A stretch of 64,000 bases of DNA, taken from NCBI RefSeq assembly GCF_000143415.4, contig NW_003314433.1:87352-151351 (forward strand), in the 5' to 3' direction. The position numbers and the translations under genes are program-made. Origin of the DNA: Selaginella moellendorffii (Eukaryota > Plantae > Lycopodiophyta). Below, piece after piece: positions 1 through 46,997 of the stretch. Position 1 is the stretch's first letter. Every line of letters begins with the position of its first letter. The notes beneath the pieces were generated by a model. That model was not told the origin of the DNA. It saw only the letters and a program-made list of their open reading frames with translations, and made no database searches.

Positions 1-2269
1 GTGCATCATTTACAAAACTTACACTCTCCAAATCTCACTCGTAAGAGGTTGTTTACTATATTACCAAAATTGTTAGTAACCTTGTGTAAAATTGATACCT
101 TCTCCTTAAATATCAACAATGGATTGTATTTCATTTTCATATCTAACATGGAAACATTTATGGATGCTTTGTGGTACTAAGTATTTACCAAATGACCACT
201 TAATTTTAGATTCAATATTTGTATTACAAAGAAAAAAAAGCAAGAGATGGAATACTTGGATTTTATGGTCCAAAAGTAATAAGAGTGAGAATAGCACCAT
301 TGGACTAACTAGAATATCTAAACCAAATAACACTTGAGATTCATAAGTTGTCCTTGAAAGCCAAGATATCAACAAAAAGTAGTGATCACAAGAATAATAG
401 AATAAGTGGTTGCATATGAAATGTTGGAGATGAGTTGAGACTACATTCTCGAAATAAATATTATAAATAGAGGATGTTATTATTGTAGATTTGCATGTTT
501 TGCAAAGGTGATACATACTTGTATGACATTTCTCCAAAAAAACCATAAATAATATCTAAAGAGTTTTGAGAAAAAATTTATCTTTCACATTTGTAGTTTC
601 CAAGTATCATGTATGTTGTATTTACATTGTTTCCTATAAGAGCCACAATTTTCAAGATTGTGAATAAAAGTAGTAAGCCATTGTTTTTTAGGAGAACAAT
701 TCCTTGGAAAGCAATATCTAAAGCAAATTGTTGATAATTATCATTGCATCTACAAGTGATGAATATAGTTAAGTGTTTGGATTGCCATTGAATAATCTAA
801 GCCACATTTTGGTTGTAATGAGATTGGATATTATATGGTTAAAGTTAACCTTGGTGATATTTCTAATTTGAAGTGTTGATTTCTCATGATTGTCAAGAAA
901 AAGTTTTGAATTTATTAATTTAAAATAATCTTGGTAAAACTTTAGAAGTTGGTCCCAAAATTAATATTGAAACCTGCAACAATTCTAATTATCAAATTTT
1001 TACCTATAATATGGAATCAACAACTGCATCTTTGGCTAAGGGAGTAAAAACTATATATTTAATAAAAAGTAAAAGAATGATTTTTCTCGAGGAGAGAAAT
1101 GAATAAATTTATTGCATCTCCACCTATTTTGTATTATATTTGTGAGCAAACTTTGATTAGCACAAGTTAAGAAACTATTTACTTGGTTGTAAGAGCACAT
1201 CACACTGCTCATTTGGCCATCTTAAATGTAACTTTGGAAAAGCAGGTTATAAGAGTTAATCAAGTTTTATTCACTCACCTATGAAAAACTTACGAGTGAA
1301 AGCATTTCACTCACTACATATTGAAAAGCAAAGAAAATAAGCTGAAAGGAAGAGAGATAAGTTGAAATTATACCTTTGCATTGAAATAATTATAAACTCT
1401 TAAATTTGAAATTCCCGGGAAGTCACCCAACCAAGAGACACTTAACCCTAAATATCCCAAGACCTTTAACCGATTGAAAAAATGAATGCACTTGGAAAAT
1501 AAGATATATTTTTATTCATAAGCGCTTTCCTTCTATATTTGAACCCTATTGATCATCTTTCAAGTTATTCTCTTTAATTGTTTATAGTAATATTAATGCA
1601 TTTATGGATAAGCTTGTGGTTTTGTAACTATAGACAAAATTCTAGAACATGAGACAAAACTTTACATCTCTAATCAAGTAAAAAAGTGTAGAGTTGAATG
1701 AAGCTACAGTGAGTATCAACAATGGAAAAATTGTAGTAGCTAAAGTAAAATTGCCAAACTCTAGTGAGTAAGAATTTTTCTCTTGTCTTTTTCATATGGC
1801 AGGGTGACACTATGCAATTCAGATGAAGCATCCTTGGAAAGCCTAGGTAAACATAGTGAATTTCCACTTGCATTGCAAGAATGCTTTGATTATAAGCACA
1901 TCTTGCTGTTTTTCTTCAGAACTAGTACTTGTGATCTTGCAAATTGCAATTAAAGTACTTCGATTTAGTCGGGTATAGTTGCCGCAAAACATCCTCCTCT
2001 GCTGCCGCAGTGCAAGTGGCCAAGCAGCACAAACATTCATTCCCAACAAACACTGATTAGTTTACTCGTTTTGAAACATTACCAGATAGATAGTGTGGTG
2101 CTGGATTCAGGGGAGGTGCTCGTAACAATCACGAAAGTTCCAGTTTGACTCCAAACATCTCCCGTGTGATCTTCCACTTGCAAGCGATATCTTGTTCTTC
2201 ATGTATCAATCAAATGGAAGGGAAGTTGCTACCTCCAAAACTCGTTTGTTTCTTCTACAACAGTGTCGA

Positions 2270-2600
2270 TACGATACGCGGAGTAAAAAAGGAAGCAATC
2301 CAAAAAGAGGATGTCCGTAAGATCACTACAGCTTAACCTCACTCTCGCAACTTGGCTCGGTGGTCTCTTCATGGAGGAATCCATGGCAGAAAGAGAAAGA
2401 TCGTCAAGTCCGAGCTTTTGCAAACGAGGGAGCGATCGAGCGAAACGACGGCTGCCGCACACTGTGGATTGATCGATAAGTCTCTAGCTGGAGACACGGA
2501 GAATCCACCGAGCATCTCAACAGGAACTTTCATGATCATCATCACGCGCTTCAAGCACGGCCTAGCTTAACATCAACGACTTTGGGCTTGGCAAAGTTCT
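2270..2600 (+). pseudogene. Possible degenerate protein-kinase (RLK-type) fragment; also at ~22080-22410 (+) and ~33100-33430 (-)
   Basis: Motif-like pieces in kinase order across frames: GVKK..EDVRKIT..HSRNLAR, HGLA*, INDFGL(A/G)K. No HRD motif found; heavily broken. Confidence 0.3.
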
Positions 2601-4403
2601 TTATGTCTCTCTCTCTCTCTCTCTCTTGCTGCTTGCTCGTGGATTTTTTAACGAATTTCTTCGTCTTCCGTGTGCTGCCGGGCTTGAGGAAATCTGTCCG
2701 AGAAACTGGGCATGTATCTTGTTTCCAGTTTGGGTTGCTTCGGACGACTTTCGTGCCGGTCGCCAGAGGAAAAAGAATTGTCATGGAAAAAACAATGGAA
2801 CCTGTAAGCGCTCTGGATAACACGTTAGCTTGTCACATCCATGGCAAAAAGCTTAGACTTTGCTGGATGATCTGCGGCCTTGATCTCAGGCTAATGCCGT
2901 GCTGATCACATCAGCGAGAGGAATTTAAAGACTTTTCCAGTTGACAAGAAGTGGTGGAGTGATCGGGCAGTGATCCATCGACTTCGAGCGAAACATGGCA
3001 TGGATCGAATCGTCCAAGTCCGAATAGAAAAAGAAAAAGGACGAGATGGAGATGGAGGGATCAAAGAAGTGGAGCGCGGCAAAGTCAATCAAAGCCGGTG
3101 CCATTTCTCTCTCCTCTCAGATTTTTGCGCTCTCTCTCTCCTTCAAACTTTCTGTGTGTTTCTTTTGCTGGCAACAAAAACAAAGGCCACACATGGGGAG
3201 CTAAAGAGGGAACATGGACTCCCAGCGAACAATAAAAATAAGCATTTTAGGGGCCCAAAACCTCTTGTCACTGGTGGACCATGGGCCGATTCCGGAATAT
3301 TCTCCGGCAGCGAATATTCTATTATTCGCTAGGGTTAAGGCACCGGCATCTAAGCTATAGAGTCAAACCAATAATGGCACGATGTAAAAAAGAAGAACTA
3401 CTAGCATTGTCATCCCCTTAGTTTTTGATTTCTAGGTTTTGCTAGAGTGGCGTTCTCTCTTTTATTCTCTTTAACAAAGCCCAATGAATGGAGTTTCAAA
3501 CGTCGTACCCCGCGTACTCTACGCGGGGTTGGTTGTCACATAGAGGTGATCATGAGGAAGCACTACCAAGGATTGGAGGCGTATAATAAACTAGAGAGAG
3601 GCGTATGGTAGCGGTGGAGGCGTAGAGCGTACGGTGGCGGGTACGAGACCGCCGGTCCGTGGCTCGAGTCCGGCGCGGCGCGGCATCCGCTGGTCCGGGT
3701 TCGAGCCCGGCGTCCCCCAGTGGTCCATTTTATGACCCAAACTGGATTCCGACAAACTTAAATTCGGGGAGCTGCTAAATCTGGCAACAAACCGGTTATA
3801 GCTAAATTTGAGGCAGATAGCTAAATTGGCCGTAAGCCCGAAGGGCTGAAAAGGGCGTCCACGGTGGCTGGATTGTATATCCAGATGTAGCTGTGCCACG
3901 TGTCAAAAAGCCAGTGGACTTCCATGTCAGAAACCCGACCTGGGGGAATTGTACGGCATTTGGATGGATAGCTATTAGCTAGTAGTTGGCTATGGCGAGG
4001 GGCGCTGCGCCTTTGCTCTTCTCTCTCTCGCCGAGCAAAGCGGGGATCTTGATGCGCTAGGGCATCGATTCTCGTTGATCGTGTTGGCAGCGCCTCGCAG
4101 CGGTGGCGGCATTGGGATTATGACGCTTGCCCGGGCAATGTGTCGAATTTGAAGGCGCTGCGCCACTGTGTCACGGGCGCGATCGAGCGCGCGTCGACGG
4201 GGCATCGATGGAGCTAGGTAATCACACAAGGGGCTCGCGTTGAATCGAGCTTTTTCCTTCTTTCTCTCTGCTTCCCGTGATCTTCCTCGCTTTTCCCATT
4301 CGATCCTCGGCTTTCCATGGCGAATTGGAGGTAATCGCTCCGAAATATTCCCTCCTCTCGGAAGCGCTTGCTCGAAATATTTCCACTCCGATCGATCCGC
4401 AAG

Positions 4404-5400
4404 ATGGAGCTCCACGGCGGCGACCCGGACCTCTGCTATGGCCTGGACGTGGATCTTGTGGGAGACAACGATGAGGCCTGGGCGAGGCGGTCGTCCAGGA
4501 TCACGAGGATTTCAGCGACGACGACATGGACGTGGACGAGCTGGAGAAGAGGATTTGGAACGATCGGCTGCGGCTCAAGCGGATCAAGGACAAGCAAAAG
4601 GCCAGGGTCAACAACGCATTCTCCTCGAATCACTCGAATCACAGCCATGGGCAGCAGCAGCAGCAGCAGCATCACGGCGGCCCAGCAGCGCAGCACCAGA
4701 ATCTGGGCAATCTCCAGGAGCAAGCCCGGCGGAAGATGTTGCGAGCCCAGGACGGGATCCTCAAGTACACGCTCAAGATGATGGAGGTCTGCAAAGCCCA
4801 AGGATTCGTCTATGGCATCATCCCCGAGAAGGGCAAGCCAGTGAGCGGCGCCAGCAACAACAACCGCGTGATGGAAGGAGAAGGTCCGCTTCGATCGGAA
4901 CGGCCCCGCCGCCATGGCCAAGTACGAGGGCATCTGCTCCAGATCCGGCGGCGGCGCTGGCCAGCTCTCCGCCGCCGCCCCGACGCCACACACTTTCCAG
5001 GAGCTCCAGGACACCACGCAATGCAGCACTGCGATCCACCCCAGCGGAGGTACCCGCTGGAGAAAGGGGTGGCGCCGCCGTGGTGGCCGAGCGGCGACGA
5101 GGAGTGGTGGCCCGAGCTTGGGCTTCCAAAGGGGCAGGGGCCGCCGCCGTATAAGAAGCCCCATGATCTCAAGAAGGTGTGGAAGGTTGGAGTTGTCACT
5201 GCGGTAATCCGACACATGTCCCCGGATATCGGGAAGATCAGGAAGCTCGTGAGGCAGTCCAAGTGCTTGCAAGACAAGATGACTGCCAAGGAGAGCGGGA
5301 CGTGGATCTCGGTGCTCAACCAGGAGGGCAGTGCTCGGGGAATTTGATCGGGCAGCAGCAGCAGCAGCAGAGCCACCACCACCATCACCATAGCCAGGTG
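4404..5400 (+). pseudogene. EIN3: EIN3/EIL-like transcription factor, frameshifted (copy 1)
   Basis: [123 protein letters not shown]. Has a 1-bp loss near 4474 and internal deletions. Confidence 0.93.
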
Positions 5401-5877
5401 ATTGTGATGAGGATAACCCTTGAGACATTAGTATGAGGCTGCCTTGGATTGCTCTTCCAGGAAGAGGTCGAAGAGCAAGAAAACAATGAGGAAGCACCGG
5501 AATTTTGACCAAGTATGACAGAGCTCGCGCGCTTGGGACACGGGCTTCTTGGTCTTGCTAGTGAGAACTCTTAAGTTCTTTTTCTTTCGTGATTGAACAA
5601 CAACAGTATGAACGCTCCAGTGATGGCGGAATTCGAGGTATAGAAACTCTGAAAAGGAATTTGTGTGGAGCGACTCTTGAATGTGAAACTTCTATGTGAA
5701 GGGAAGATCCCTTTACGATTCGGCGGTATCTCCGAATGAGAGAGTGGTCCTCTTCGTGCGTTTCTAAGAGGCTACGAGGATTGGGAAGGAAGACAAGTTG
5801 GAAACTAGTGAAAAGTCTAAAAAGATTCGAGGGATACTATGCATATGCTTTTAGGGTTCTTTGCACATTAGCTTGTA

Positions 5878-6935
5878 ATGGAGGGGGCGCGGCTCGCGAT
5901 CGTCTCCGATCTCGATGGAACAATGGTACGCATTGCAATGCCTCTTCAATGCGCTCTGGGCCGCAGATTATTTCCATGACTCGCTGAATGAGAGCGAGAA
6001 CCAAACAAGGGGTGGGATACGGCTGTTTGGAAGAGACTTCCAAGTTTCCAGAGCTTACATTCCAGGTAGAAAAATTCCATATCCTCTCTTTGATTGTGTT
6101 TACAACGGTTTTCTCTATCTCGTCCTGGCTTTTTTTTTTTTCTGTAGGACACAGCGACCTCACAAAGTCAGCTTCAAGCTGAAGAAGGCGGAAGCTCCTC
6201 GGGTTGTGGAGACACTGTTGAAGAGATTGATCAAGTGTGAGGCAAGTTTTTAGAGGATCGTTCGAAGCTTTTGTGATCTTTTTCTTTTTTGTTCTTCCAG
6301 TTGGATGTAAAAATCATATACAGCGGAGGACAGGATATGGATGTTCTCCCTTGAGCAGCTGACAAGGGACAGCTCATGAGGGAAGGCAGAGCTCCTCAGA
6401 AAGTTCTTGTGATACTGAGCTCTTTGCCGTCAAAGACGTTTTTGGAGTGATCGTAAGTTCTTGAAGTCGATTGATCACCCACTCACTCACTGACGATCTC
6501 AGGTCGGGAATGCGTTTGAAGATCTTACGCAGTGGTACCTTGATAGCCAAAGACAATCCCAAGATCTTTCGTGGCACTGAAAGATGCGCTTCGGGAATCT
6601 TACAAGCTATCCGAGAGTTCAAGTTTGATCCTTGTGTTTCGCCCAGGGATGCCGACTTACTGAGCCAGCTCACTGTTTGAACACTTGAAAAGGCCAATGG
6701 TAAGTTCCTCGTGTTTAGTAGTTTTGGATGCTTGAGCAACGAAATGGCTGGCAGGCCCCTGACTCAACGCTGGTCACTCCGTGGGGACTAGAAGACGATC
6801 TTCGTAGAAGCGTGTCCCCTCCACGGTATTCACAGGGGAAAGAACTTCTGTATGTGGGTTGATCGAATTCGTGCGACGAAGGTTGGGGACGTTACTTGGG
6901 TTGTCAAGTTTGATAAGTGGCAGCGAACGGGTACG
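5878..6935 (+). pseudogene. SPP: Sucrose-phosphatase (SPP) pseudogene with introns (copy 1)
   Basis: Pieces FNALWAADYFHDSL, ETSKFPELTFQ, QRPHKVSFKLKK, LDVKIIYSGGQDMDVL, AKDNPKIFRGTERCASGILQAI, VSPRD and WVVKFDKW match plant SPP. Contains stops and deletions. Confidence 0.85.
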
Positions 6936-7788
6936 TCAAGTTCTTTCTGAGTCATATGCATTATTTTATTGCTGGTGCATTCCAGACGAAGAGCTGAATT
7001 ATCGCTTGACAACCGCCGTGTGTTTCAATATGAGGTGGCGTTCTTATCGCTTTGTCTTGGTGGAGTTATTCAGCTTTGCTTCTCTTACAGGATGGCATGC
7101 CTTATGCGAGTGCATTACGAATCCACGAAACGTGGCTTGATGGTTATGCGGGAAGACCTTTGCTCCTAATGTAGGAGGCACAGCCAACGATAGGCGAAAA
7201 AATAAGCAGGGACGAGTCATCGTCCAGGTAAGCGTGTTAAAGTTCTCAGCTCTGGAATCTAATTTAGTGGATGCTGCTGTGTGTGCAGTGGCATACAAAT
7301 TCCAGGTTTACTGAGATTGATATATGGTGAAGGAAAACGAGGGTATGTTTACACATTTATACTCATCCATTCATGGTGGTTGCTGTAGAACAGGGTGACA
7401 TCAGGATCAAAAGCGAGAATCAAGCACACTCAGGTCGGAACGACAGGGATCAAACTCATCAGTAGCAACGGAGAGGTTTGTATTCTGGATTTAAATCGCG
7501 TGTCTCAGCAAGCAACAGCAAATGGAAGGAGAAAAAACCCGGCGGGTTGGGGTCCACGTCGTCAATAAAACGATGCGGATCAATGTTAAAAACCCACAGA
7601 CTGGTACGTGAAATGCTTTACAGCCAGAAGTTTTGGCTTTCTTACCGAAGAATTGTGCAGAATCTGGCAAGGAAAAGGAAAAGTATAATCGGGCCACTAA
7701 GAAGGTGGAGCATTGCGAATGGAAGATAAGCTAAAATGCATTTATTTTCGTTCTCTTTCTTTCTGCGTGGTATGGCGGACTTCTCTCA

Positions 7789-7927
7789 GCATATCCCGAG
7801 CTGCATATCCAGTGATTCAAAGCAAAGTTCTCACCCTTATACCCCCCTTTGATGATAGTCGGGCAATTATCACACCACTATTCTTCCATGTCTTGTGTGT
7901 CTCTAGTCGACCAACCAGAGTATAAAA
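7789..7927 (+). promoter_or_regulatory. PHO1-like promoter: two P1BS motifs (GNATATNC) plus TATA box
   Basis: GCATATCC at 7789-7796 and 7803-7810; TATAAAA at 7921-7927. Same arrangement in copy B (27768, 27782, ~27900). Lies upstream of the SPX ATG. Confidence 0.6.
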
Positions 7928-8798
7928 TGCGACCACCACCTTCATTGCAAACTCCCCCCGCTCCCTCTTCCTCTCGCAGAAGGAGAGAAGGCTCCAAGTT
8001 TTTGAGTGAGCAAAGGGCTCTCACCTCGAGAACTCGACAAGCTCTCTCGATTCCAAGCTTGGCTCCTTCGGTTATTCTTCTCCTCTTCGTCCCCTTTCAA
8101 GAGTAAGTTTTTTCTTTGCTTTCGTAGTTCTGAGCTTGCGATTCTTTCAGTTTGGTTGCGCCAGCAATCGGGACTCTGACGAAACAAAACGCTCCATAAG
8201 CGTGATTTCCAGAAAGAGTACGTGCCTCGCTTCCTTCCATGCTTTAGATGCTCAAATGATTCTTTCATTCCCTTTCGCTCGCATAAATTACTCGTGTTGA
8301 CAAGAAAAGAGTTGAAGTGTGTGAGAGTGTGTGTAAGTGTGTAACTTACGGCAGCTTCTTTTCATGTAGATTCCCCTGCATTCCCTGTCCTTTTGTTTCC
8401 TTTTTAAGTTCCATAGGCCAATGGATCGCTTGCTTCTTCTCTCCTCTTGCACTCTGCTGCGTCAGTTTCACTCGGGAAAACGTGTTCTTATGTAATTGTT
8501 CGCTGGCCTCGGTGAGAAACGAAGGCTTTCCCCCTTTTTTCCAGAGATGATCTTAAGGCGCTGTTTTCTTGTGAGAATTGGTGGTGCTCCTCCCCAGCAC
8601 AATGCATTTGATGATTCCACGCCACCATTTGTCTCGTCATATGCTCACTGCCACTGTTCTTCCTCTGCTTCCAGAGCACAGGCGCCAGAAAAGTTTGAAG
8701 AGGCATTCTGAACTTGACACCATTTCCTCCAGGTATTTCATCTCTTGCTTGATCGTTTTCTTGACGATGTTCGCCTCAGGTAATCCAAGCTTTCAGAC

Positions 8799-10040
8799 AT
8801 GGTGAAGTTCCAGAAGCAGCTGGAGGGCCAGCTCGTCCCAGAGTGGCGGGTGAAGTACTGCGACTACAAGCAGCTCAAGAAAGTTGTCAAGAGAATCAAA
8901 AACCAGATCCTACATACCAAGAACCAGCAGCACAAGGTGTTCGATCCAAATGTCTTCTCGGTTGACAAGAGCAAGCTTCAAAACTTGCTGCAAAATCCCA
9001 GCGCCATCCTGAGCAGCTGCTGCGAACAATCCATATCCTCCGAAACGTCCATGGATGTTCTGGACTGTAAAGACAAAACAAAACCCTTCAATACGATCAG
9101 GTTGTGCACAAGACGAGAATTGGAGATGGCGAGGATTTTTACGAGACGGAGCTGTTCGGAACTCGATCGGATCACGAAAAGAGCTTCTTTTTCGGCCTTG
9201 ACGATCAGCTCAACAAAGTGGACAAGTTTTTTAGATGCAAGGAAGACGAGTACGATGCTCAAGCACGGCAACTTCACATCCAAATGGAAGAGCTCATCCC
9301 TATGCAAGGTTCGTTCTAGCAGCCTCTAATTCTGTGGCACTTAACTTGGAATCGTTTGATCTCTGCCATGTTGTAGATGACGAATCTCAGAGCTTGAAGG
9401 GGAGCCCGGCAACAAAGGAAAGGTTCAGCGAGCAGCCAAGATGCTCCAGACGGCCTTTGTCGAATTTTATCGTGGGCTTCGACTCCTAAGAAACTTCAGG
9501 TGAATGACCTCTATACGATTGATCCATGTTCTCAAAGTGTTGAAAACTTACTTGGCAGCTCCTTGAACATGATGGCATTCGTCAGGATCCGCAAGAAATA
9601 TGACAAGGTACTTATGGAAAATGGAAAATTACTGCAGACTTCTAAAAAGGTTTTTTAAATTTTCAGGTGACTGGAGTCTGGCAGTTATCTCAAGATGGTC
9701 GAAAACTCTCACTTTGCAACGTCGGACAAGGTGTGAAGAAATTTTCCTTTGAGGGTCTTGCTGATGGACCGCGTAGAGAGAGTGTTCACTCTGCACTTTA
9801 CGAAAGGCAAATGAAAGCAAGCCATGGATATCTCAGGCCCATACACTCTGCGAGCAATCATGGAAATATAAACTTTATCAGGCCCATACACTCTGCGAGC
9901 AATCAAACTTTATCCTGGGTAAGAGCAGGATATCCATTTCATGCATTCGGATCGTGGTTATTAATTAACCTTCTATCACCATTGATGATGCGACGCAGAG
10001 ATTGTATACTAGTGGTTTCATGGCAATGGCATTGCCTCTA
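8799..10040 (+). pseudogene. PHO1: PHO1-like (SPX-EXS) gene fragment: SPX region only, EXS absent (copy 1)
   Basis: [28 protein letters not shown]; YETELFG..FFFGLDDQLNKVDKFFRCKEDEY; KMLQTAFVEFYRGLRLLRNF; SLNMMAFVRIRKKYDK; YLKMVENSHFATSDK. Exons are separated by short GT-AG introns. Homology stops near the first transmembrane segment. Confidence 0.88.
9833..9915 (+). repeat. Local ~45-bp duplication inside the PHO1 fragment
   Basis: tcaggcccatacactctgcgagcaatca at 9833-9860 and 9878-9905; single in copy B. Confidence 0.85.
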
Positions 10041-10126
10041 GAAAAGGAAAGCACTCACCATACCTTTGGGAATAACTGTAATCTATTCATTTAATTTTCA
10101 GCTAGAACTTTCAGAGATCACGGACC

Positions 10127-11985
10127 TTATCGTTTCTTCTTGCTGCGCTCTTTGGAAGGTTTGGTAGCCTCCTCTTCGGCGTTGTGGTCGGCTTCAAGTC
10201 TCGCGAGCCGCAAATCAAACAATGCTGTTGTGAGGATTCCTTCTTGAGACACCACTTTACCTTGTCAGCGTGTCTCTGCCAAGTCAAATCCATCCTTCCT
10301 GAGCTCCTGATAGATGCAAAGAGCATGAAGAACGAGCGAAAGAAAACCTGCGTTGTCACCTTTCCAGTGTGTTGGGTGTGATCGTAAGGTGCCATTTGCC
10401 AATACATGATCGTCCAAGAGAAAAAATCTCTCAGCGTTTCTCCAGGCTGAAAGACAAATCAATAACAGAACAGGAAGATGAACTACTATCAGCACTCACC
10501 AAAAGTGTTTGTTGGGAATCAGCCAGGCCCAGCTCGGATCGATCTTTAATTTCCGTGCTTTCTGTGTCAGCTTTTTGCCTTCGCCCCTAAGAATAGCAGC
10601 TGCCTCTTCACAGTGACTCCACTGCATCCTAGAATACAAAAGGAAACCGACAAGTTTTCTTACATCCTTCTTTTTTACTACCTCGTCATCGTCCTCTTCG
10701 TCTTTTCCTTTATTAATCGATCCAGCATCACTGTTGTCACCATCAGTTTCGCCTTTCTCCTTACTAACTTCAATCCACGCGCTTTGTGTTTCCTGCTTGA
10801 GACATTAGTATGAGGCTGGATGATGGCTTGATCATACTAACCTCAATAATGCTCGAAGGTCCAGCGAGGAAAGGTCGTCGTGTCACTTTTTTTTTTGCCG
10901 ACTTCTTTCATACCTCCATACAGAAACAAAGTATCCTTTCCAACGACCATTCCAGCATTTATTCTTCCACAAGGCAACAACCTTCAAGCAGAACGCTCAA
11001 CGTTGAGACGCATTTTCCACATTTGGATCAACCACTTTCTTCTGCTTTGGATGCACACTTAACCACTACACAATCTCAGATTGCCATACCTTAATCTTTA
11101 GGCTCTTTGCTCCAAAGGATACCTGCGAGCGATGGTGCTTAGATAATTTTAAAAAAATCGACGAGATACAAACCATCTGGAAAGCATATACATCTCGATC
11201 ATAAAAACGCTGTGCAGGGAATCACCTGCAAAAGCCATTAGTTTTTCCAACGCATGCATTGAAACCGTACTCATCAGCATCAACTACACCACCAAACAAG
11301 ATGTGGACAAAAATCCTGCTCTTGGCCAGGAGCCATACCGGATTTTTTCACCTTCACAAAACACATTGAAAAACTAAAACTCCAAACGAGAATGTAAAAC
11401 AAGCAAACCTTGTCCCACTCCCAATCCGTGGATCTAACGTCCACATATCTGCGAGCACTACACCTTTGTCGGATTGATCTTTGTCAGGGGCAGGCTCTTT
11501 GAAATAGCCACCGTACAAGAAAATCTAGAAAAGAAAAAATGTTCACAACACGCAAAACTATACTTTTAGTAGACAAATACCTCATCTAAATAAACAGCAA
11601 GCTGAGAACCAGTTCCAGCTGAAGGCCAGGCAGCTCCAAGCTTGGGTTTTATCTCTTGCCACTGCAAAAGGAAATCAGTTTAGTTGTGAAAAAACAAGGA
11701 AGAACGATGAGCGACAGAAACAAACCTTATAATCTTTCAATCGAATTCTTACGCACAGAGCAATTGCATTGTGGGGAAGGAGCTGCTACATTCTCTTCGA
11801 CATGAATTTCGCTCTTCTTTGCTTTCTCCTCGTGGAGTTTAGCCTGACAAGAAGGAAAACGATTGAGAGTCTTTGGCCAGTGCTTTGCTTACCAAGATCG
11901 CATCAATATCATCCTCGTCCCACACCTTCTTCTCGTCGCGATGAGCTCGCTTCTCCGCCGCCTTGGCCGTCTTGCTCGAAGAACC
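10127..11985 (-). pseudogene. KLHDC4: Kelch domain-containing protein 4 (KLHDC4/DUF4110)-like multi-exon pseudogene
   Basis: Minus-strand exon pieces: KTAKAAEKRAHRDEKKVWDEDDIDAIL; EEKAKKSEIHVEENVAAPSP; WQEIKPKLGAAWPS; GGYFKEPAPDKDQSDKGVVLADMWTLDPR; YWQMAPYDHTQHTGK; ELRKDGFDLAETR; LARLEADHNAEEEA. Several kelch exons appear missing and frameshifts are present. Confidence 0.8.
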
Positions 11986-12184: not shown

Positions 12185-15100
12185 ATGGAGGAGGAGTGGA
12201 TCGGCTGTTTCTCTGTCAAGGCGGTCAAGGAGGCTCTCGCAGCGAAGCGGGACAACAAGTGGCACTTCAATGCGATTCGGTTTTATTGTGGGCACATCTG
12301 GAGGCTGGAGGCGCTTGACGCATCCAAAGGTGAGTTTGTTGATGAGGTGAGTGCTACCGTCCAGTGGTTTGGAGGCACAGAGGAGGATCTGATTGGTGTG
12401 CTCAACTGGTACATTTCAAATCCACCGAGTTTAGACAAGGCTCTGGATGTGGGAGATGCTCCTGGTGATGGCAGTTCGTCTGCTGCTGCTGCTGCTCACA
12501 TTGACATTCTCAAGGCCGCTTTGGTACCACAGCTCGACATCAGATTCATCCACTTCGCTGCCAGGGTCGCTTGTAGGTTGGGCATTCCCAGTGATCGAAT
12601 GCAAAGGGTGGCAGAGGGCATTGCTCCTCCTCAGCAGGGACAGGATATTCGCCAGATTGAGGTGCAGAGGTTTGCAAAGCTACTGACGATGACAGAGGAA
12701 TTCAAGGTCTTGAAAGTGCTAGTATTCCATTGGGTAGGCGCAGACATCCTCACACCACCTCAGGAGCTTGAGTTGGCCTTTGCTCAGCTCGACTGCTTGA
12801 CAGAGCTCTGGTTGCGCCATGTTGGGAACCCAGAGACTCTCCTTAGCCAACTCCTTAGGAAAGCAGGAAACAACTTGAAACGTCTCGAATTGCTGGCGAA
12901 CAGGATGACAGTGGAAGGATTTGGGAAATTGAGTAGGGATCTGGCAAGTCAGGAGTGCAAGGTGGAAGAGTTAGCCATCCTGGATGAGGGCATTGCCAAG
13001 GAAGGGTGGGAACAGGCATTTCAGAATGGCATTTGCAATAAGCTAGTGGCACTGCAGGCATATTCGTTTCCAGAGGGGGCAGGTGAAGCACTCTTCAAGG
13101 CACTCACGAGTCCAAACTGTTCGCTGCAAAGACTATACCTATTTTGGGGTACTGATGCTGGAGTGTTGCCATGGGTATGCAAGGCTCTTCAGGAGGGCAC
13201 CAGCCTGTCAGTTTTAGATTGCCGAAGTGAGGACCTGAGCAATGCAACGGGCCTGGGTGAGGCCCTGAGCAGCGCTAAGTGTGGCTTGAAGGAACTCAGC
13301 GTTACACTTTATCCAGGTGATGGTGGTGGATGGTTGGGCAAAGCGCTACAAAATCCCAATTGCAAGCTGATCAAGCTTGATCTTCATTGTCCTGACGAGG
13401 GAGGAGGAATGGTCGGTGACAGCAGTCTGTGGTCAGCTCTCTCAAGTCCACATTGTAAGCTGCGCCATTTGAAAATATGGGGTAGCACGGGAGAAGATGA
13501 GTTAACGTTGGAGTTTGCTAAGGGCATAGAGAAGAGCCAACTGGAGCATTTGAGTATAAGGAACTGCAAAATCACGAATGAGGAGCTCTTTTGGAAAGCT
13601 ATCACCAGCTGCAAGTCTCTGAAAGCTTTGTCATGTGACTCGGAGCTGCCATGGAGGTGCCTTTTGGGAAGCAGCATTGAAGACTTACATATTCGATTTA
13701 AGTCAGAATTTGAAAAGCTGGAAGAGCTTTGCCAGTTCCTGGGGGATCCAAAATGCAAGGTGCGCAGATTCAGGGCTCCTTATCTTAGAAGTGATGCACA
13801 GAAGAGACAAATTCTGGCTGCCCTGGAGGAAAACTACCAAAGCCTCGTGGAAGAGCTTGATATAGGCAATGATTCCGAAGCTTCTGAAGCTTTCAAGCAG
13901 AGGTGTTCTGGTCTTTTAGAGCGGAATGCAATCTTCCAGCAGAGTGCATTCAAAGACTTTGACAACCCGTCAACAGCAAAGCTCTTCTTGTGTGGTGCTA
14001 GCAGGGTTGGAAAGACCACAATAAAAAAAAACCTCTGCCGCAGAGTGTCTTGGTTTCCATCATGTCTCCAAAGGCATGCTTCAACAGCAGGCATTGAGCT
14101 GCAACCACTTGTCTATGCGACCACCAAACAAAAGTTGCTCATTTGCGACCTGGCTGGACAGGAAGAGTTCCATGCTTTCCACCAGTACTTTCTCAGAGGA
14201 AGTGAGAAGGATCTCTTCTTGATCGTATGCAAGGTGGAGGATGACAATTGTGACGTTTTCAAGCAGAATTTGGTTTACTGGCTGAGGTTCATTGCTTCAC
14301 ATCAATCAGCCTCACCCAAAAGGAAGCCCAGGGTCTTGATTGCCTTGAATTTTTTCACTCGAAAATCCAGCTATGACCCAAAGGAGGTGGTTTCTGCAAT
14401 AATCTCCGACAAAGGCTATCGGCAAGTACTTGAGTTTGGGAATGACTTTTGTTTTAAGGTGGTGGCCACTCAAGTGAAAGATTTAAGGGGGATAAAAACC
14501 ATGTTGGGGAGTTGCTTGGAAGAACTGTTGTCAGCCCAGCAACAAATGCCACGGGAATGTCTCAAAGCAAAGGGGAAACTGGTACAAAGTGCAAGTCACA
14601 ACAAGGTCATACCCCTAGATAAGGTTGGCAAAATCCTCTTGCCTAACATCAGTTCCAAAAACATAGAAGCCAGAAAGAACGTTGTTAAATTCGTCTTGCA
14701 ATTTCTACATGATTGTGGAGATGCAATTTACTTTGGCTTGGGACATGAAGAGGGTGACATTGTGTCTCAATTTGTCATCTTAGATGTCCAATGGTTTATG
14801 AGGGATGTGGTGCAACTCTTCATACCTACAGAGAAGACTAGCAAACTCAAAAGTCAAATGGATACACACCAAGTTAAATATCAATTGCAAGAACAATGTG
14901 GGAACCAAGACAAAATAGTGGAGTGCATTCTTGGAGTGCTCCATGAGATGGGAGTGATATTGCCTTGGGATGATACATGGGATGGGAATTGGCATAACTT
15001 GCCCAAAGAGTTAATAATGCCAACACTATTGCAAGAAGAATATTCACCTCCAGAATATTTATTATTGCCATCAGTGCCAATTGACACTCAAAAAAACCAC

Positions 15101-15610
15101 AACTACTGGGGCAGGAGGTTTGAATGCAAAGACAAGGACTTGAAATTGTTTCCTGCAAGTATTTTCACAAAGATCCAAGTTAAACTTTACAAATTAAGCA
15201 AGCAAGGTATTAGGCTTGGGAATGGATGGGTGGCTTTGAAAGAAAACCTTATCGAGACAATTGTGAGAGTTGGGGGAGACACAAACAATTGGAAAGATAG
15301 GCAATGGGTTGATGTCATCATTTATTACCCAAAAGAGGTAGAGAATGCACCAAGGCCAGATTTGGAAAAAGAAGCTGAAGGATGGATGGAAAAAATTAGA
15401 AATTGCATTATTGGGGTATGTATGGAGGATTGCCCATTTTTGGAAATTGAAGAAAATGTGATAAGGCGTGGTTATGTGTGGAGAAGGATACTAAATAAGG
15501 TAGGTAAACCAAAATCATGGGATGCAGTTATTTGTCCACTAAAGCAAATCAAATATGAAGCAAGAGAAAGAGGTTTAGACTACTCCCACACTTTGGAATT
15601 ATTCACATGA
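12185..15610 (+). CDS. TORNADO1-like LRR-Roc-COR (ROCO) protein, copy 1; 1141-aa ORF cut short by a frameshift
   Basis: Ribonuclease-inhibitor-type LRRs (PNCSLQRLYL, KCGLKELSV, PNCKLIKLDL, PHCKLRHLKI); Roc P-loop GASRVGKT, STAGIEL, DLAGQEEFH; TRN1-like YWLRFIAS; COR-like LHDCGDAIYF..VILDVQWF. No introns. Confidence 0.88.
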   Translation: MEEEWIGCFSVKAVKEALAAKRDNKWHFNAIRFYCGHIWRLEALDASKGEFVDEVSATVQWFGGTEEDLIGVLNWYISNPPSLDKALDVGDAPGDGSSSAAAAAHIDILKAALVPQLDIRFIHFAARVACRLGIPSDRMQRVAEGIAPPQQGQDIRQIEVQRFAKLLTMTEEFKVLKVLVFHWVGADILTPPQELELAFAQLDCLTELWLRHVGNPETLLSQLLRKAGNNLKRLELLANRMTVEGFGKLSRDLASQECKVEELAILDEGIAKEGWEQAFQNGICNKLVALQAYSFPEGAGEALFKALTSPNCSLQRLYLFWGTDAGVLPWVCKALQEGTSLSVLDCRSEDLSNATGLGEALSSAKCGLKELSVTLYPGDGGGWLGKALQNPNCKLIKLDLHCPDEGGGMVGDSSLWSALSSPHCKLRHLKIWGSTGEDELTLEFAKGIEKSQLEHLSIRNCKITNEELFWKAITSCKSLKALSCDSELPWRCLLGSSIEDLHIRFKSEFEKLEELCQFLGDPKCKVRRFRAPYLRSDAQKRQILAALEENYQSLVEELDIGNDSEASEAFKQRCSGLLERNAIFQQSAFKDFDNPSTAKLFLCGASRVGKTTIKKNLCRRVSWFPSCLQRHASTAGIELQPLVYATTKQKLLICDLAGQEEFHAFHQYFLRGSEKDLFLIVCKVEDDNCDVFKQNLVYWLRFIASHQSASPKRKPRVLIALNFFTRKSSYDPKEVVSAIISDKGYRQVLEFGNDFCFKVVATQVKDLRGIKTMLGSCLEELLSAQQQMPRECLKAKGKLVQSASHNKVIPLDKVGKILLPNISSKNIEARKNVVKFVLQFLHDCGDAIYFGLGHEEGDIVSQFVILDVQWFMRDVVQLFIPTEKTSKLKSQMDTHQVKYQLQEQCGNQDKIVECILGVLHEMGVILPWDDTWDGNWHNLPKELIMPTLLQEEYSPPEYLLLPSVPIDTQKNHNYWGRRFECKDKDLKLFPASIFTKIQVKLYKLSKQGIRLGNGWVALKENLIETIVRVGGDTNNWKDRQWVDVIIYYPKEVENAPRPDLEKEAEGWMEKIRNCIIGVCMEDCPFLEIEENVIRRGYVWRRILNKVGKPKSWDAVICPLKQIKYEARERGLDYSHTLELFT

Positions 15611-16490
15611 AGCAGAGAGTTGGGATGTGATTAGCGATTTGAAGGTCTCAGATGAGAATGCTTTGGCTAAGCTATTGATGCCTAATGAGCAAAAACATGA
15701 AGTGGTGAATAAGTTTGTTGAACTTCATGAACTCTTGAAGGACTATGAGGAGGTTGGAGAAGTCACAATTCCAAGGCATCATCAGATGTTGTTGAGTTTC
15801 CAAACATTGAAGACCCAAAACTTGATGCAATCCTCAGATATATTAAGAAGATGTTTGATAAAATGGAGAACCGTTTTAACAAGTTGGATACAAAACTTAA
15901 TGACATTGAAGTAAGCGTTAACGAGCTCAAGAATGGAATCAAGTTTATCATGGATAAAGTGAATGCAATCCATACAACGTGTTTTCAAGTATTATTGAAA
16001 TTGGAGACAGATTGCCCAAAATATCCATATATTCTTGATGAGAATAATAGGTGGAAAAATTATAGCAAAATACTGGGAACACATAGTAGACTTCACTACT
16101 TGTGTGAATGGCCTGGAGGAACTTATACTCAGGGAATTAAAGGTCATCAAGTGAAAAATTCTGTAAGTGTTGAATTGGATCTCCCACCAAACTACATTGA
16201 TCCTATTATTTATTGGGGCCAAAGTTTGAGGACATTTTGCTGGTGTTGGAGAGATAGCGAATGCAATATTAGACGAAATCAAGGGAAGCCTCATAAGCTT
16301 TTTGGATTCATGTCTTCTCAAAAGCAAGTTAACTACAAATCCCAAAGCAGAAGATGTGCAAGAGATATTTAAGCTAGTGACAACTAAATTTGGGAAAGAA
16401 GAAAAATGGGAGACAATCATGGAAAATTATTTTGCTCTTTATCCCAAAATCTTGGAGGGAAAACAAATATGGGTTTGCAAAGGTATTTAG
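15593..16490 (+). pseudogene. Frameshifted C-terminal part of LRR-Roc-COR copy 1 (coiled coil plus TRN1-like tail)
   Basis: FDKMENRFNKLDTKLNDIEVSVNELK, CPKYPYIL..RLHYLCEWP and ENYFALYPKILEGKQIWVCKGI lie in different frames. An extra T near 15593 relative to the paralogs. Confidence 0.85.
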
Positions 16491-36124: not shown

Positions 36125-37079
36125 AGTCTTTGTTAAATAAAACTAAAATCATAGATATATCTCAATGTAAAATACCTTTGTAAATCCATATTGTTTTATA
36201 ATCCAAGGTTATAGGATGGATATTAAAATATTTAGCCATGATTGTCTTTTAGTCAATTTCTTTCACAATTTTAGTTTTCATATCGAAATGTCATTAATAT
36301 GAAATCATTTGATTAGTTTTTCCTTCACTTGGATTATTAAAAATTCAATACTGAAATAAACTTGAAACATTAGAATAAACATGAAATAATATTTTAGAGC
36401 AATAATGCAAACTTACCTCATTGACTTCTATTACAAAATATAGCCTAATCATTCCAAAGACATATAACAATAACTATATAAAGCATATTTATTTACCTTC
36501 ATCTTGCCAAATCACCTTGTAAAAATATAGATTGATGATCTGCTTTAGAATGGTGTTTGTTAAATAAAACTAAAAATTTAAATGTTAAATACCTTTGCAG
36601 ACCTATATTTTTCTTTCTTCTAGGATTATGAGATGAAGAGCAAAACATATAATTAATGATTTACTTTAAATGCCCTACATAGCGTTTGTTAGATAAAACT
36701 AAAAGCATGGATATATTTCAATATAAAATACCTTTGTAAATATATATTGTTTTATCATCCAAAGTATGGGATAAAAAATAAATTATTTGGTAGTTTTTCC
36801 TTCATTTAAAGCATTAAAAATTCAACACTGAAATGAACTTAAAACATTAGAATAAACAGGAAAGAATAATTTGGAGTTATAATGCAAACTTACCTCATTA
36901 ACTTCTGCTATAAAATATACCCCAATCATACCAAAGACATATAATAATAACTATATAAAGCATATTTATTTACCTTAGTTTTACCAAACCACCTCATAAA
37001 AATTTAAATTGATGATCTATTTTAAAATGGTGTTTGTTAGATAAAACTAAAAACTTAAATATTAAATACCTTTGCAGAC

Positions 37080-40000: not shown

Positions 40001-40953
40001 TCTAGTCTTTGCAGTGAACAGTTTGGACTAGTGAGTGCCTTGAAGAGTGCTTCACCTGCCTCCTCTGGAAATGATGCCGTCAGTTCTACTAGCTTATTGC
40101 AAATGCCATTCTGAAATGCCTGTTCCCACCCTTCCTTGCCAATGTCCTTATCTAGGATGGCTAACTCTTCCACCTTGCACTCCTGACTTGCCAGATCCCT
40201 ACTCAATTTCCCAAATCCTTCCACTGTCATCCTGTTCGAAGCCAAGGCGAGACGTTTCAAGTTGTTTCCTGGTTTCCTAAGGAGTTGGCTAAGGAGAGTC
40301 TCTGGGTTCCCAACCTTGTCCAACCCGAGCTCTGTCAAGCAGTCGAGCTGAGCAAAGGCCAACTCAAGCTCCTGAGGTGGTGTGAGGATGTCTTTGCCTT
40401 CCCAATAGATACCTAGCCCTTTCAAGACTTTGAATTCCTCTGTCATCATCAGTAGCTTTGCAAACCTCTGCACCTCAATCTGGCCAATATCTTGTCCCTG
40501 CTGAGGAGGAGCAATGCCCTCTGCCACCCTTTGCATCCGATCACTGGGAATGCCCAACCTACAAGCGACCCTGGCAGCGAAGTGGATGAATCTGATGTCG
40601 AGCTGTGGTACCAAAGCGGCCTTGAGAATGTCAATGTGAGCAGCAGCAGCAGCAGCAGACGAACTGCCATCACCAGGAGCATCTCCCACATCCAGAGCCC
40701 TGTCTAAACTGGGTGGATTTGAAATGCACCAGTTGAGCACACCAACCAGATCCTCCTCTGTGCCTCCAAAACTCTCGACGGTAGCACTCACCTTATCAAC
40801 AAACTCGCCTTCGGATAGCTCCAGCCTCGAGAAAAGCCCACAAGAAAAGCCAATCGCATTGAAGTGCCGCTTGTTGTCCCGCTTCGCTGCGAGAGCCTCC
40901 TTGATCTCCTTGACAGAGCCACAGCTGATCCACACTCGTCGCTCCTCCTCCAT
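37080..40953 (-). pseudogene. TORNADO1-like LRR-Roc-COR, copy 2; 959-aa ORF (38074-40953) followed by a broken C-terminus
   Basis: LRR and Roc intact (GASGVGKT, DLAGQEEFH). A deletion in COR joins LQEEY to the YVWRRIL region out of frame, and there is a stop at LCE*. Confidence 0.88.
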
Positions 40954-46960: not shown

Positions 46961-46997
46961 TCTATCTATTAATCTAAGAATAGATTAAACAGAGAAT

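What the first reader, a model, noticed from the sequence alone, without database searches (positions are those of the whole stretch)
12700..13875. Hypervariable LRR surface in a TORNADO1-like ROCO GTPase cluster: candidate non-NLR immune receptor system
Seen in sequence: the three paralogs (12185+, 40953-, 63913-) match almost base for base between LRR strands and in the Roc core, but differ repeatedly at the x positions of each LxxLxLxx strand. Copies 1/2/3: LKVLVFHW/LKGLGIYW/LKGLEFNW; LTELWLRH/LTELGLDK/LTELCLRN; LKRLELLA/LKRLALAS/LKRLQLLG; LQRLYLFW/LQRLDLSR/LQRLNLLW; LIKLDLHC/LIKLNLDC/LIKLHLFS; LEHLSIRN/LEHLGISE/LEHLGIWS; LKALSCD/LKSLICD/LKALLCE; IEDLHIRF/IEDLRISQ/IEDLKISE. Many are multi-base codon swaps between identical flanks (CGC CAT vs GAC AAG; GAA vs GCC vs CAA). 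Established: these positions form the concave ligand-binding face, and this pattern marks diversifying selection in NLRs and other LRR receptors; angiosperm TRN1 is a low-copy developmental gene, while hypervariable LRR-ROCO genes have been proposed as immune receptors in brown algae. Inference: an expanded, clustered, TE-rich family of LRR-Roc-COR non-self receptors in a land plant, using a GTPase switch instead of NB-ARC.
Basis: partly seen in the sequence, partly recalled or inferred. Interest (0 to 1): 0.93.

Follow-up and report, generated by a model that had tools for sequence, protein, structure and literature searches.

The report
Hypervariable LRR-ROCO receptor-like cluster in Selaginella
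A spikemoss (Selaginella) gene cluster encodes LRR-Roc-COR proteins whose predicted ligand-binding residues change far faster than silent sites, as in plant and animal immune receptors; no function has been tested, and the three copies in this window have all lost their C-terminal domain.

Summary
The three ORFs are paralogs of a Selaginella moellendorffii 'ROCO family / TORNADO 1' family. I compared them with seven reference paralogs.

- **Selection:** codons 1-600 have overall dN/dS 1.9. A selection model beats the neutral model by 2dlnL = 716, with 12.5% of sites at omega about 16. All four sub-blocks, each with its own tree, agree.
- **Location:** 57 sites have posterior above 0.95. In the LRR, 38 of 45 lie in or just after the AF2-predicted beta-strands, at positions 5, 7 and 8 of LxxLxLxx (Fisher p = 1e-16).
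- **Not mutation bias:** nucleotide diversity is 0.40 in those codons (positions 1 and 2 above position 3), 0.05 next door and 0.02 in the background. Roc-COR (0.5-0.8) and the C-terminal domain (0.4-0.6) are constrained.
- **Alleles:** two haplotype alleles differ by 0.4-1.4% in the flanks but 4.5-9.7% in the LRR.

- The family is not a TRN1 ortholog. It sits in a lycophyte-plus-fern ROCO clade.
- All three window copies are broken after codon 950. Intact members lie elsewhere.
- The Roc G4 motif is NFFT, so GTP specificity is unproven.
- Immune function is inference.

The parts
12185..16481 (+). Copy c1: LRR-Roc-COR paralog. The ORF 12185-15610 (1141 aa) is open through LRR, Roc and COR. The C-terminal domain is broken by +1 nt at 15591, -1 nt at 15770, a 32-nt deletion at 16192, and a reference-frame stop at reference aa 1348.
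12698..13885 (+). c1 LRR domain (the flagged region): 15 RI-like repeats of 19-31 residues, mostly 26-29. The hypervariable residues sit at positions 5, 7 and 8 of LxxLxLxx.
12203..12655 (+). c1 N-terminal region. It holds further positively selected sites (c1 residues 7, 9, 32, 34, 37, 39, 46, 61, 82, 156), including two LRR-like strands (residues 5-8 and 30-35).
13967..14455 (+). c1 Roc domain. P-loop GASRVGKT, G2 Thr and DLAGQ are intact. G4 reads NFFT.
14543..15586 (+). c1 COR domain. The Pfam COR-A match is below its gathering score, but the model matches CtRoco and LRRK2 Roc-COR by fold.
37071..40953 (-). Copy c2: ORF 40953-38074 (959 aa). A 425-nt frame-breaking deletion at 38104 removes reference aa 950-1091. 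Reference-frame stops lie at aa 1298 and 1429. LRR is 40437-39241 and Roc is 39159-38671.
59892..64000 (-). Copy c3: the ORF enters from beyond the window end and runs to 60608. There is a -1 frameshift at 60631 (reference aa 1153). The coding sequence is cut at 59892 (reference aa 1397) by an LTR element. LRR is 63562-62378 and Roc is 62296-61808.
52112..52222 (-). Displaced last 37 codons of c3, separated from the rest of the gene by the LTR element.
52223..59891 (.). LTR retrotransposon inserted in the c3 coding sequence. LTRs are 52225-54031 and 58091-59891 (98.3% identical, TG..CA ends, 5-bp target duplication CTTAA, internal 23-nt tandem arrays). It has no long ORF.
41023..50326 (.). Nested Copia elements starting 70 bp upstream of the c2 start codon. 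The outer element is 41023-50326. The inner element, 42625-47369 on the - strand, has an intact 1355-aa polyprotein.
1046..11734 (+). Upstream part of the roughly 20-kb segmental duplication unit that carries c1. It holds an EIN3-like ORF, an SPX fragment and a Kelch/DUF4110-like gene region. It is 92-98% identical to the units around the reference paralogs.

Best explanation
The window is part of a segmentally duplicated cluster in Selaginella moellendorffii, or a very close relative. The roughly 20-kb duplication unit carries an EIN3-like gene, an SPX fragment, a Kelch-like gene and one single-exon gene for an LRR-Roc-COR protein of about 1435 aa with a conserved C-terminal domain.

Shown:
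- The paralogs exchange sequence by gene conversion, which keeps most of the 5' half nearly identical.
- About 45 codons at positions 5, 7 and 8 of the LxxLxLxx strands, plus about ten N-terminal codons, are driven apart by very strong diversifying selection on the amino acid.
- Roc-COR and the C-terminal domain are conserved.

Inferred:
- The proteins are cytoplasmic receptors. Their RI/NLR-type LRR concave face binds fast-evolving ligands, most plausibly pathogen-derived molecules.
- By analogy with CtRoco and LRRK2, the LRR rests against Roc-COR. Ligand binding would change the nucleotide and oligomer state of Roc-COR and release the C-terminal module (coiled coil plus hydrophobic helices) as the output.

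The three copies in this window are 3'-truncated members. They are either pseudogenes that act as a reservoir for gene conversion, or LRR-Roc-COR-only proteins.

The confidence value is for the whole statement, including the inferred receptor role. The diversifying-selection part alone I would put at about 0.95.
For: - **Identity and clustering:** best hits are nine S. moellendorffii ROCO proteins at 81-89% identity. Flanks are 92-98% identical to several reference units with the same neighbour genes.
- **Architecture:** Roc scores above the Pfam threshold. The AF2 model has pLDDT 80 with 15 LRR strands. Foldseek top hits are LRRK2 and the CtRoco LRR-Roc-COR structure 6hlu, then NLRP and ribonuclease-inhibitor LRRs.
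- **Selection:** M0 omega is 1.9, 0.81 and 0.59 for codons 1-600, 601-1130 and 1131-1434. 2dlnL is 716, 44 and 4.4 for the same regions, and 100-193 in four blocks with their own trees. My likelihood code reproduces the IQ-TREE lnL exactly.
- **Placement of sites:** 38 of 45 selected LRR sites lie in the strand zone, odds ratio 20, p = 1e-16. The motif register is shown.
- **Selection rather than mutation bias:** diversity is 0.40 within selected codons, with positions 1 and 2 above position 3. It is 0.05 in adjacent codons. Third positions of invariant neighbouring codons are at 0.00-0.04.
- **Allelic divergence:** the syntenic haplotype pair L001/L004 differs by 0.4-1.4% in flanks and 4.5-9.7% in the LRR.
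- **Gene conversion:** trees differ between regions, dS rises 5' to 3', and the PHI-like test gives 0 of 1000 permutations.
- **Frame conservation:** across the four intact reference genes and the three window copies, every indel in the first roughly 2840 nt is a multiple of 3. In the intact genes, c1 and c3 this holds to about nt 3390; c2 has a 425-nt deletion at nt 2848.
- **Context:** S. moellendorffii is reported to have only about 2 NLRs (PMC3782705).
Against: - There is no expression, genetic or biochemical evidence.
- All three window copies lack an in-frame C-terminal domain, and several reference members are also broken.
- The Roc G4 motif is NFFT, so guanine specificity and a GTP/GDP switch are unproven.
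- The C-terminal 'output' domain has no Pfam, PDB-sequence or Foldseek match, and its model is mediocre (pLDDT 65).
- I could not read the model coordinates. 'One concave face' therefore rests on DSSP strands plus general knowledge of LRR geometry, not on a measured surface.
- Recombination violates the single-tree assumption of site models. This is mitigated by the block-wise runs and the tree-free tests, but not removed.
- Diversifying selection does not by itself identify the ligand class.
Confidence: 0.6

Rival explanations
1. The copies are decaying pseudogenes and the differences are neutral drift.
For: All three window copies and four of the eight reference loci examined carry frameshifts, deletions or stops. 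The whole-gene non-synonymous to synonymous column ratio among the window copies (133:36) is near the neutral expectation.
Against: - Substitutions are concentrated 15- to 20-fold in single codons, with positions 1 and 2 more variable than position 3.
- Omega2 is about 16. Neutral drift cannot push dN (about 0.8 at these sites) above dS (0.03-0.08).
- Roc-COR and the C-terminal domain show dN/dS of 0.4-0.5 even between the window copies.
- None of the three window copies has a stop or a frame-breaking indel in its first 950 codons.
- The four intact reference genes show the strongest signal.
Confidence: 0.03
2. A mutational process creates the pattern without selection for diversity. This could be micro-tract gene conversion from divergent donors, or locally targeted mutation.
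For: Gene conversion is pervasive. Codons next to selected sites are slightly more diverse than background, 0.05-0.07 against 0.02. Many changes are multi-base, and kappa is low in the LRR.
Against: - A mutational process should hit third positions and neighbouring silent sites equally. Observed third-position diversity of invariant neighbouring codons is 0.00-0.04, against 0.47-0.48 at positions 1 and 2 of selected codons.
- Pairs sharing an amino acid at these sites nearly always share the codon, 598 against 28.
- The sites follow the structural register i, i+2, i+3 of the beta-strand.
- Conversion can shuffle variants, but it does not explain why only exposed residues vary.
Confidence: 0.07
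3. There is real diversifying selection, but for a non-immune recognition task. Candidates are self/non-self or gamete compatibility, control of selfish elements, or tracking a fast-evolving endogenous partner.
For: The sequence evidence identifies a hypervariable binding surface but not its ligand. The family lies in TE-rich DNA. No defence-specific domain such as TIR, CC or RPW8 is present.
Against: - Clustered, copy-number-variable LRR families with divergent alleles and many pseudogenes are the typical pattern of pathogen receptors. This is established for NLRs and proposed for brown-algal ROCOs (PMC3341825, PMC11378527).
- The species has very few NLRs (PMC3782705), leaving a gap such a family could fill.
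- None of this is a direct test.
Confidence: 0.25
4. The genes are TORNADO1 co-orthologs with a developmental signalling role, as their database names suggest.
For: NCBI names several members 'protein TORNADO 1'. They share the LRR(RI-type)-Roc-COR layout and a C-terminal domain that is also found in other streptophyte ROCOs.
Against: - The tree places angiosperm TRN1 with Ceratodon, Chara and Marchantia P0068. The family falls in a separate, well-supported lycophyte-plus-fern clade (SH-aLRT 99-100).
- No angiosperm protein appears among the best 150 representatives.
- Identity to TRN1 is about 24% even for the other Selaginella ROCO, P0160.
- Omega of 1.9 over 600 codons and ten or more clustered copies are unlike a low-copy developmental gene.
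Confidence: 0.05

Closest known systems
Brown-algal LRR-ROCO candidate immune receptors (Ectocarpus, Saccharina; PMC3341825, PMC11378527)
   Same: Both have an LRR N-terminal to Roc-COR. Both are clustered, with rapid birth and death of copies. In both, positive selection falls on solvent-exposed concave-face LRR residues, and both are proposed to work as NLR-like receptors without NB-ARC.
   Different: The algal genes diversify by shuffling 72-nt single-repeat LRR exons and by alternative splicing. The Selaginella genes are a single long exon with RI-like repeats, mostly 26-29 residues, that stay in register. They diversify by codon-level substitution plus gene conversion. They are in an unrelated lineage and carry a distinct C-terminal domain shared by streptophyte ROCOs.
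Highly variable plant NLRs (hvNLRs) and type-I R-gene clusters
   Same: Shared features are high entropy and dN/dS above 1 at xxLxLxx positions, tandem or segmental clusters, frequent sequence exchange, many pseudogenes, TE-rich surroundings and highly divergent alleles.
   Different: The central module is Roc-COR, a Ras-like P-loop with a COR dimeriser, rather than a STAND NB-ARC. The LRR is N-terminal. There is no TIR, CC or RPW8 domain.
Arabidopsis TORNADO1 (TRN1/LOP1)
   Same: Both have the LRR(RI-type)-Roc-COR layout, and several Selaginella members carry the TRN1 name in databases.
   Different: They belong to different clades. TRN1 is low-copy and developmental (Cnops 2006, as cited in PMC4104024). 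TRN1 matches the Pfam COR-B and LRR_6 models, which the family does not reach.
Chlorobium tepidum Roco and human LRRK2 (solved LRR-Roc-COR structures 6hlu, 7lht, 8fo9)
   Same: These are the best structural matches over LRR-Roc-COR. G1-G3 motifs are conserved. They provide the mechanistic template: the LRR folds back on Roc-COR, and the dimer/monomer cycle depends on nucleotide state.
   Different: The family has no kinase or WD40 domain. Its G4 is NFFT rather than NKxD/THLD. Its LRR is hypervariable, which is not a feature of those proteins.

Membership tests
ROCO proteins | Roc (Ras of complex) GTPase-like domain | tested here: met
   Pfam PF08477 scores 41.5-42 bits against a cutoff of 27 in all three copies. 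phmmer matches LRRK2 Roc and M. barkeri Roco2.
ROCO proteins | COR domain directly after Roc | tested here: met
   Pfam COR-A scores only 26.6-32.2 bits, below the 35.3 cutoff. However, the AF2 model aligns over LRR-Roc-COR to CtRoco 6hlu and LRRK2 at E of 1e-17 to 1e-18, and to the Roc-COR tandem 3dpu.
ROCO proteins | Canonical guanine-nucleotide motifs G1 (GxxxxGKT), G2 (T), G3 (DxxGQ) and G4 (NKxD) | tested here: inconclusive
   G1 GASRVGKT, G2 STAGIE and G3 DLAGQ are conserved. G4 is NFFT, with the Lys and Asp absent. Nucleotide specificity cannot be judged from sequence.
TORNADO1 (TRN1) orthogroup | Groups with angiosperm TRN1 in a phylogeny | tested here: not met
   TRN1 (Trifolium, Nyssa, Helianthus) clusters with Ceratodon, Chara and Marchantia P0068. 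The family lies in a separate lycophyte-plus-fern clade with SH-aLRT 99-100. This was a quick search with midpoint rooting only.
TORNADO1 (TRN1) orthogroup | Low copy number and purifying selection typical of a developmental gene | tested here: not met
   There are at least 11 paralogous loci. M0 omega is 1.9 over codons 1-600.
Plant NLR (NB-ARC-LRR) | NB-ARC / STAND NTPase domain | tested here: not met
   Pfam gives no NB-ARC or NACHT hit at E up to 1. The central domain is Roc-COR.
Plant NLR (NB-ARC-LRR) | Diversifying selection on solvent-exposed xxLxLxx residues, clustering and allelic hypervariability (functional resemblance) | tested here: met
Brown-algal LRR-ROCO candidate receptors | Repetitive single-LRR exons reshuffled between paralogs | tested here: not met
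   The reference genes are one ORF of about 1432 codons plus a 2-codon terminal exon. The repeats stay in register across paralogs.
Brown-algal LRR-ROCO candidate receptors | Positive selection on concave-face LRR positions | tested here: met
   Compare PMC3341825 and PMC11378527.
Immune receptor (any class) | Ligand recognition that triggers a defence output; induction or requirement in infection | not testable with these tools
   No expression, genetic or biochemical data are available. No paper on land-plant ROCOs in immunity was found.

The most novel reading that the evidence does not exclude
Seed-free vascular plants use a second, NB-ARC-independent class of intracellular immune receptors. 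In these LRR-Roc-COR proteins the hypervariable concave face senses pathogen molecules and a streptophyte-specific C-terminal module executes the response. This would compensate for the near absence of NLRs in Selaginella. The 3'-truncated copies would be kept open in their first 950 or more codons as sensor-only partners or as donors for gene conversion.
Probability: 0.35. Interest if true: 0.9.

Novelty: new variant of a known kind. Interest (0 to 1): 0.78.

Why it matters
Intracellular immune recognition in plants is almost entirely attributed to NB-ARC NLRs. Selaginella is reported to have only about two of them (PMC3782705). A clustered family with one of the strongest LRR-surface selection signals one can measure, built on a Roc-COR core, is a concrete and testable candidate for how such a plant senses pathogens.

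It would also extend the 'LRR-ROCO as receptor' idea from brown algae to land plants as an independent case.

The data also show that ROCO proteins are widespread in streptophytes: Chara, liverworts, mosses, ferns and lycophytes. This contradicts a published statement that only flowering plants have them (PMC4104024). It further shows that the 'TORNADO 1' database labels on these genes are misleading.

Tried and rejected
- **Full M7/M8 optimisation:** my own run exceeded the time limit. I replaced it with a grid-based M1a/M2a-like fit on IQ-TREE GY94 branch lengths, checked against the IQ-TREE lnL. An unregularised two-dimensional (alpha, beta) mixture overfitted, calling 151 sites, and I did not use it.
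- **Sites chosen by entropy:** choosing hypervariable sites by entropy and then computing dN/dS is circular. I replaced it with structure-defined classes.
- **C-terminal domain:** Pfam, a PDB profile search and AF2 plus Foldseek gave nothing significant.
- **Source record:** an exact look-up of the c1 product found no record, and P0007 DNA was not on record. The exact source assembly of the window therefore remains unidentified.
- **Literature:** searches for land-plant ROCO immune receptors returned nothing relevant.
- **Assembly errors:** I considered that the single-base frameshifts might be assembly errors. This cannot be the whole story, because c1 and c2 also carry 32-nt and 425-nt deletions and reference-frame stop codons, and c3 carries an LTR insertion with a target-site duplication.
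- **Model coordinates:** these were not available to scripts, so surface mapping was limited to DSSP strands and motif register.
Full report
**What is in the window**

The window holds three long paralogous ORFs:
- c1 at 12185-15610 on the + strand.
- c2 at 40953-38074 on the - strand.
- c3 from beyond the window end to 60608 on the - strand. It is in frame up to base 64000.

Pfam finds a Roc domain above threshold and a sub-threshold COR-A match in each copy, and no NB-ARC. The AF2 model of c1 has mean pLDDT 80 and pTM 0.68. It shows a helical N-terminal region with two strands, then 15 LRR strands between residues 178 and 559, then Roc and COR. Foldseek against the PDB returns LRRK2 and the Chlorobium tepidum LRR-Roc-COR crystal structure first (E of 1e-17 to 1e-18). 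NLRP proteins and ribonuclease inhibitor follow for the LRR.

**Origin and family**

The best database hits are nine Selaginella moellendorffii proteins at 81-89% identity. They are named 'ROCO family protein' or 'protein TORNADO 1' and most are about 1435 aa long. I fetched eight of their loci.

The non-coding and neighbouring-gene flanks of the window copies are 92-98% identical to several of these loci. The same neighbours recur: an EIN3-like gene, an SPX fragment and a Kelch/DUF4110 gene. The window is thus another stretch of a roughly 20-kb segmental duplication array in S. moellendorffii or a very close relative. The exact c1 product is not on record.

In the reference, an intact gene is one ORF of about 1432 codons plus a two-codon last exon. 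Four loci (L001-L004) are intact. By synteny L001 and L004 are haplotype counterparts. Four other loci carry stops or frameshifts.

**State of the three window copies**

All three are broken in the 3' third:
- **c1:** +1 nt at 15591, -1 nt at 15770, a 32-nt deletion at 16192, and a reference-frame stop at reference aa 1348.
- **c2:** a 425-nt deletion at 38104, and reference-frame stops at aa 1298 and 1429.
- **c3:** a -1 frameshift at 60631. A 7.7-kb LTR element (LTRs 98.3% identical, target duplication CTTAA) splits off the last 37 codons, which lie at 52222-52112.

None of the three has a disabling lesion in its first 950 codons. In c1, c3 and the four intact reference genes, every indel in the first roughly 3390 nt is a multiple of three. 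In c2 this holds up to its 425-nt deletion at nt 2848. If the whole genes were dead, the later lesions should be spread along them.

Their confinement downstream suggests one of two things (inference). The LRR-Roc-COR part may still be kept open by selection. Alternatively, it may be continually repaired by gene conversion from intact paralogs. The second reading fits the 5'-to-3' rise in dS from 0.03 to 0.2.

**Checking the observation**

I aligned the three copies with seven reference paralogs at the DNA level and read codons in the frame of the intact L001 gene.

Amino-acid entropy peaks recur every 19-32 residues, mostly 27-29, immediately after the conserved Leu of each LxxLxL motif.

IQ-TREE GY94 gives the following:

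| Region (codons) | omega | kappa |
|---|---|---|
| 1-600 | 1.9 | 1.7 |
| 601-1130 (Roc-COR) | 0.81 | 4.2 |
| 1131-1434 (C-terminal domain) | 0.59 | 5.7 |

My pruning code reproduces those likelihoods exactly. I used it for M1a-like against M2a-like mixtures:

| Region | 2dlnL | Selected class |
|---|---|---|
| Codons 1-600 | 716 | omega2 = 16, 12.5% of sites |
| Roc-COR | 44 | seven scattered sites |
| C-terminal domain | 4.4 | not significant |

The paralogs are mosaics. Region trees disagree. In addition, 56% of informative site pairs fail the four-gamete test, and the PHI-like permutation gives 0 of 1000. I therefore repeated the test in four blocks, each with its own tree. 2dlnL was 142, 193, 100 and 146.

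**Where the selected sites are**

Fifty-seven codons have posterior above 0.95. In the LRR, 38 of 45 fall in a zone defined beforehand from the model (DSSP strand plus three residues). That zone covers 29% of the domain. The odds ratio is 20 and Fisher p = 1e-16.

In motif register they occupy x5, x7 and x8 of L1-x-x-L4-x5-L6-x7-x8, and sometimes x3 or x9. Thirteen of the 15 repeats carry at least one. From established LRR structural knowledge, these positions line the concave sheet. I could not measure this on coordinates.

Tree-free Nei-Gojobori estimates for the predefined zone are as follows:

| Set | dN | dS | omega (bootstrap range) |
|---|---|---|---|
| Zone, ten paralogs | 0.22 | 0.11 | 2.0 (1.4-3.2) |
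| Zone, four intact genes | 0.243 | 0.095 | 2.55 (1.51-4.72) |
| Zone, three window copies | 0.200 | 0.139 | 1.43 (0.91-2.69) |
| Rest of LRR, ten paralogs | 0.034 | 0.037 | 0.92 (0.57-1.76) |

These values hold even though the zone includes the invariant core leucines.

Ten further selected sites lie in the N-terminal 170 residues, outside the flagged range. They include two LRR-like strands.

**Selection rather than mutation bias**

Nucleotide diversity is 0.40 inside selected codons: 0.47, 0.48 and 0.25 at positions 1, 2 and 3. It is 0.05 in the adjacent codon and 0.02 seven or more codons away. Third positions of invariant neighbouring codons stay at 0.00-0.04. Paralogs that share the amino acid at a selected site share the codon in 598 of 626 pairs.

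A local mutator or micro-conversion process would not spare silent positions. Neutral decay cannot raise dN tenfold above dS.

The syntenic haplotype pair L001/L004 differs by 0.4-1.4% per 500 bp through almost all of the 10 kb upstream. It jumps to 4.5-9.7% exactly where the gene's LRR-coding part begins. The locus therefore also carries strongly divergent alleles.

**Relationship to TORNADO1**

A search of 1.8 billion representative proteins found only 11 clusters with E below 1e-30. All of those that carry a source name are from Selaginella or Adiantum. Weaker hits come from liverworts, a moss and Chara, and no angiosperm appears in the top 150.

I obtained angiosperm TRN1 sequences through a second search. 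In the tree they group with Ceratodon, Chara and Marchantia P0068. The window family lies in a separate lycophyte-plus-fern clade (SH-aLRT 99-100; quick search, midpoint root).

The family is therefore a ROCO but not a TRN1 ortholog. These results also contradict the statement in PMC4104024 that only flowering plants have ROCO genes.

**The switch and the output**

The G1, G2 and G3 motifs are canonical and invariant in the family. G4 reads NFFT where M. barkeri Roco2 has NKID. A P-loop NTPase is likely, but guanine specificity is unproven.

The roughly 300-residue C-terminal domain is under purifying selection (omega 0.4-0.6). It is conserved from Chara to ferns, with the motifs PRYPY, LHxLCE and HxV, a hydrophobic helical pair and a terminal WxC. 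It has no Pfam, PDB-sequence or Foldseek match, and its model is only moderately confident. Calling it a cell-death or signalling module is speculation.

**Literature**

Positive selection on concave-face LRR residues of clustered ROCO genes has been described in brown algae and interpreted as candidate pathogen recognition (PMC3341825, PMC11378527). There the diversity comes from shuffling 72-nt LRR exons, which is not the case here.

I found no paper describing land-plant ROCOs as candidate immune receptors. A 2025 survey of fern and lycophyte immune receptors does not mention them. S. moellendorffii is reported to have about two NLRs (PMC3782705).

**Verdict**

The receptor interpretation is the best available reading but remains untested. 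The 'TORNADO1-like' label, the 'GTPase switch' and the implied integrity of the three window copies need the corrections given above.

Noticed in passing
window 15591-16481; 37071-38104; 52112-60631: Every disabling lesion in the three copies lies after reference codon 950. These are the frameshifts, the 32-nt and 425-nt deletions, the reference-frame stops and the LTR insertion. None of the three has a lesion in its first 950 codons. This suggests either that the LRR-Roc-COR part is kept open by selection or that it is repaired by gene conversion.
   Followed up: partly
window 52223-59891: An LTR retrotransposon without long ORFs is inserted in the c3 coding sequence. It has 1.8-kb LTRs (98.3% identical) carrying arrays of a 23-nt tandem repeat, and a 5-bp target duplication CTTAA.
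   Followed up: partly
window 41023-50326: Two nested Copia elements begin 70 bp upstream of the c2 start codon. The inner one (42625-47369, - strand) has an intact 1355-aa gag-pol ORF and near-identical LTR ends, so it was inserted recently.
   Followed up: partly
window 4526-5344 (+), 24231-25094 (+), 30253-30852 (-); 8799-9326 (+), 50737-51264 (-): The duplication unit also carries EIN3 DNA-binding-domain ORFs and SPX N-terminal fragments. In the reference these are annotated as chimeric EIN3/S6PP/SPX genes next to each ROCO paralog. Whether an ethylene-signalling transcription factor gene co-duplicated with the ROCO genes has any meaning was not examined.
   Followed up: no
window about 29880: This is the junction between a partial direct copy of the unit (20257-29880) and an inverted copy (29880-40977). 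The array here is partly palindromic.
   Followed up: no
whole gene, all paralogs: Synonymous divergence rises from about 0.03 at the N-terminus to about 0.2 in the C-terminal domain. Kappa is 1.7 in the LRR region against 4.2-5.7 elsewhere. This points to a gradient of gene conversion and to selection favouring radical (transversion or multi-base) changes.
   Followed up: partly
c1 residues 720-725 (window about 14342-14359) and the same site in c2 and c3: The Roc G4 motif is NFFT in the family and LNxF-type in most streptophyte ROCOs, rather than NKxD. The loop just after it (RKSSY / PKCNY / PEPDF) is also variable.
   Followed up: partly
L001 and L004 (GL377608.1 and GL377709.1): These syntenic haplotype counterparts differ by 0.4-1.4% through almost all of the upstream flank, but by 4.5-9.7% in the LRR-coding part and 5.6-7% in part of the 3' region of the ROCO gene.
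   Followed up: yes
L005 18264-21335: A second, fragmentary ROCO copy lies about 4 kb downstream of the annotated gene. It shows further decayed members in the reference cluster.
   Followed up: no
literature (PMC4104024): A review states that among photosynthetic eukaryotes only flowering plants have ROCO genes. The searches here find multi-copy ROCOs in Chara, liverworts, a moss, ferns and Selaginella, forming at least three clades.
   Followed up: partly
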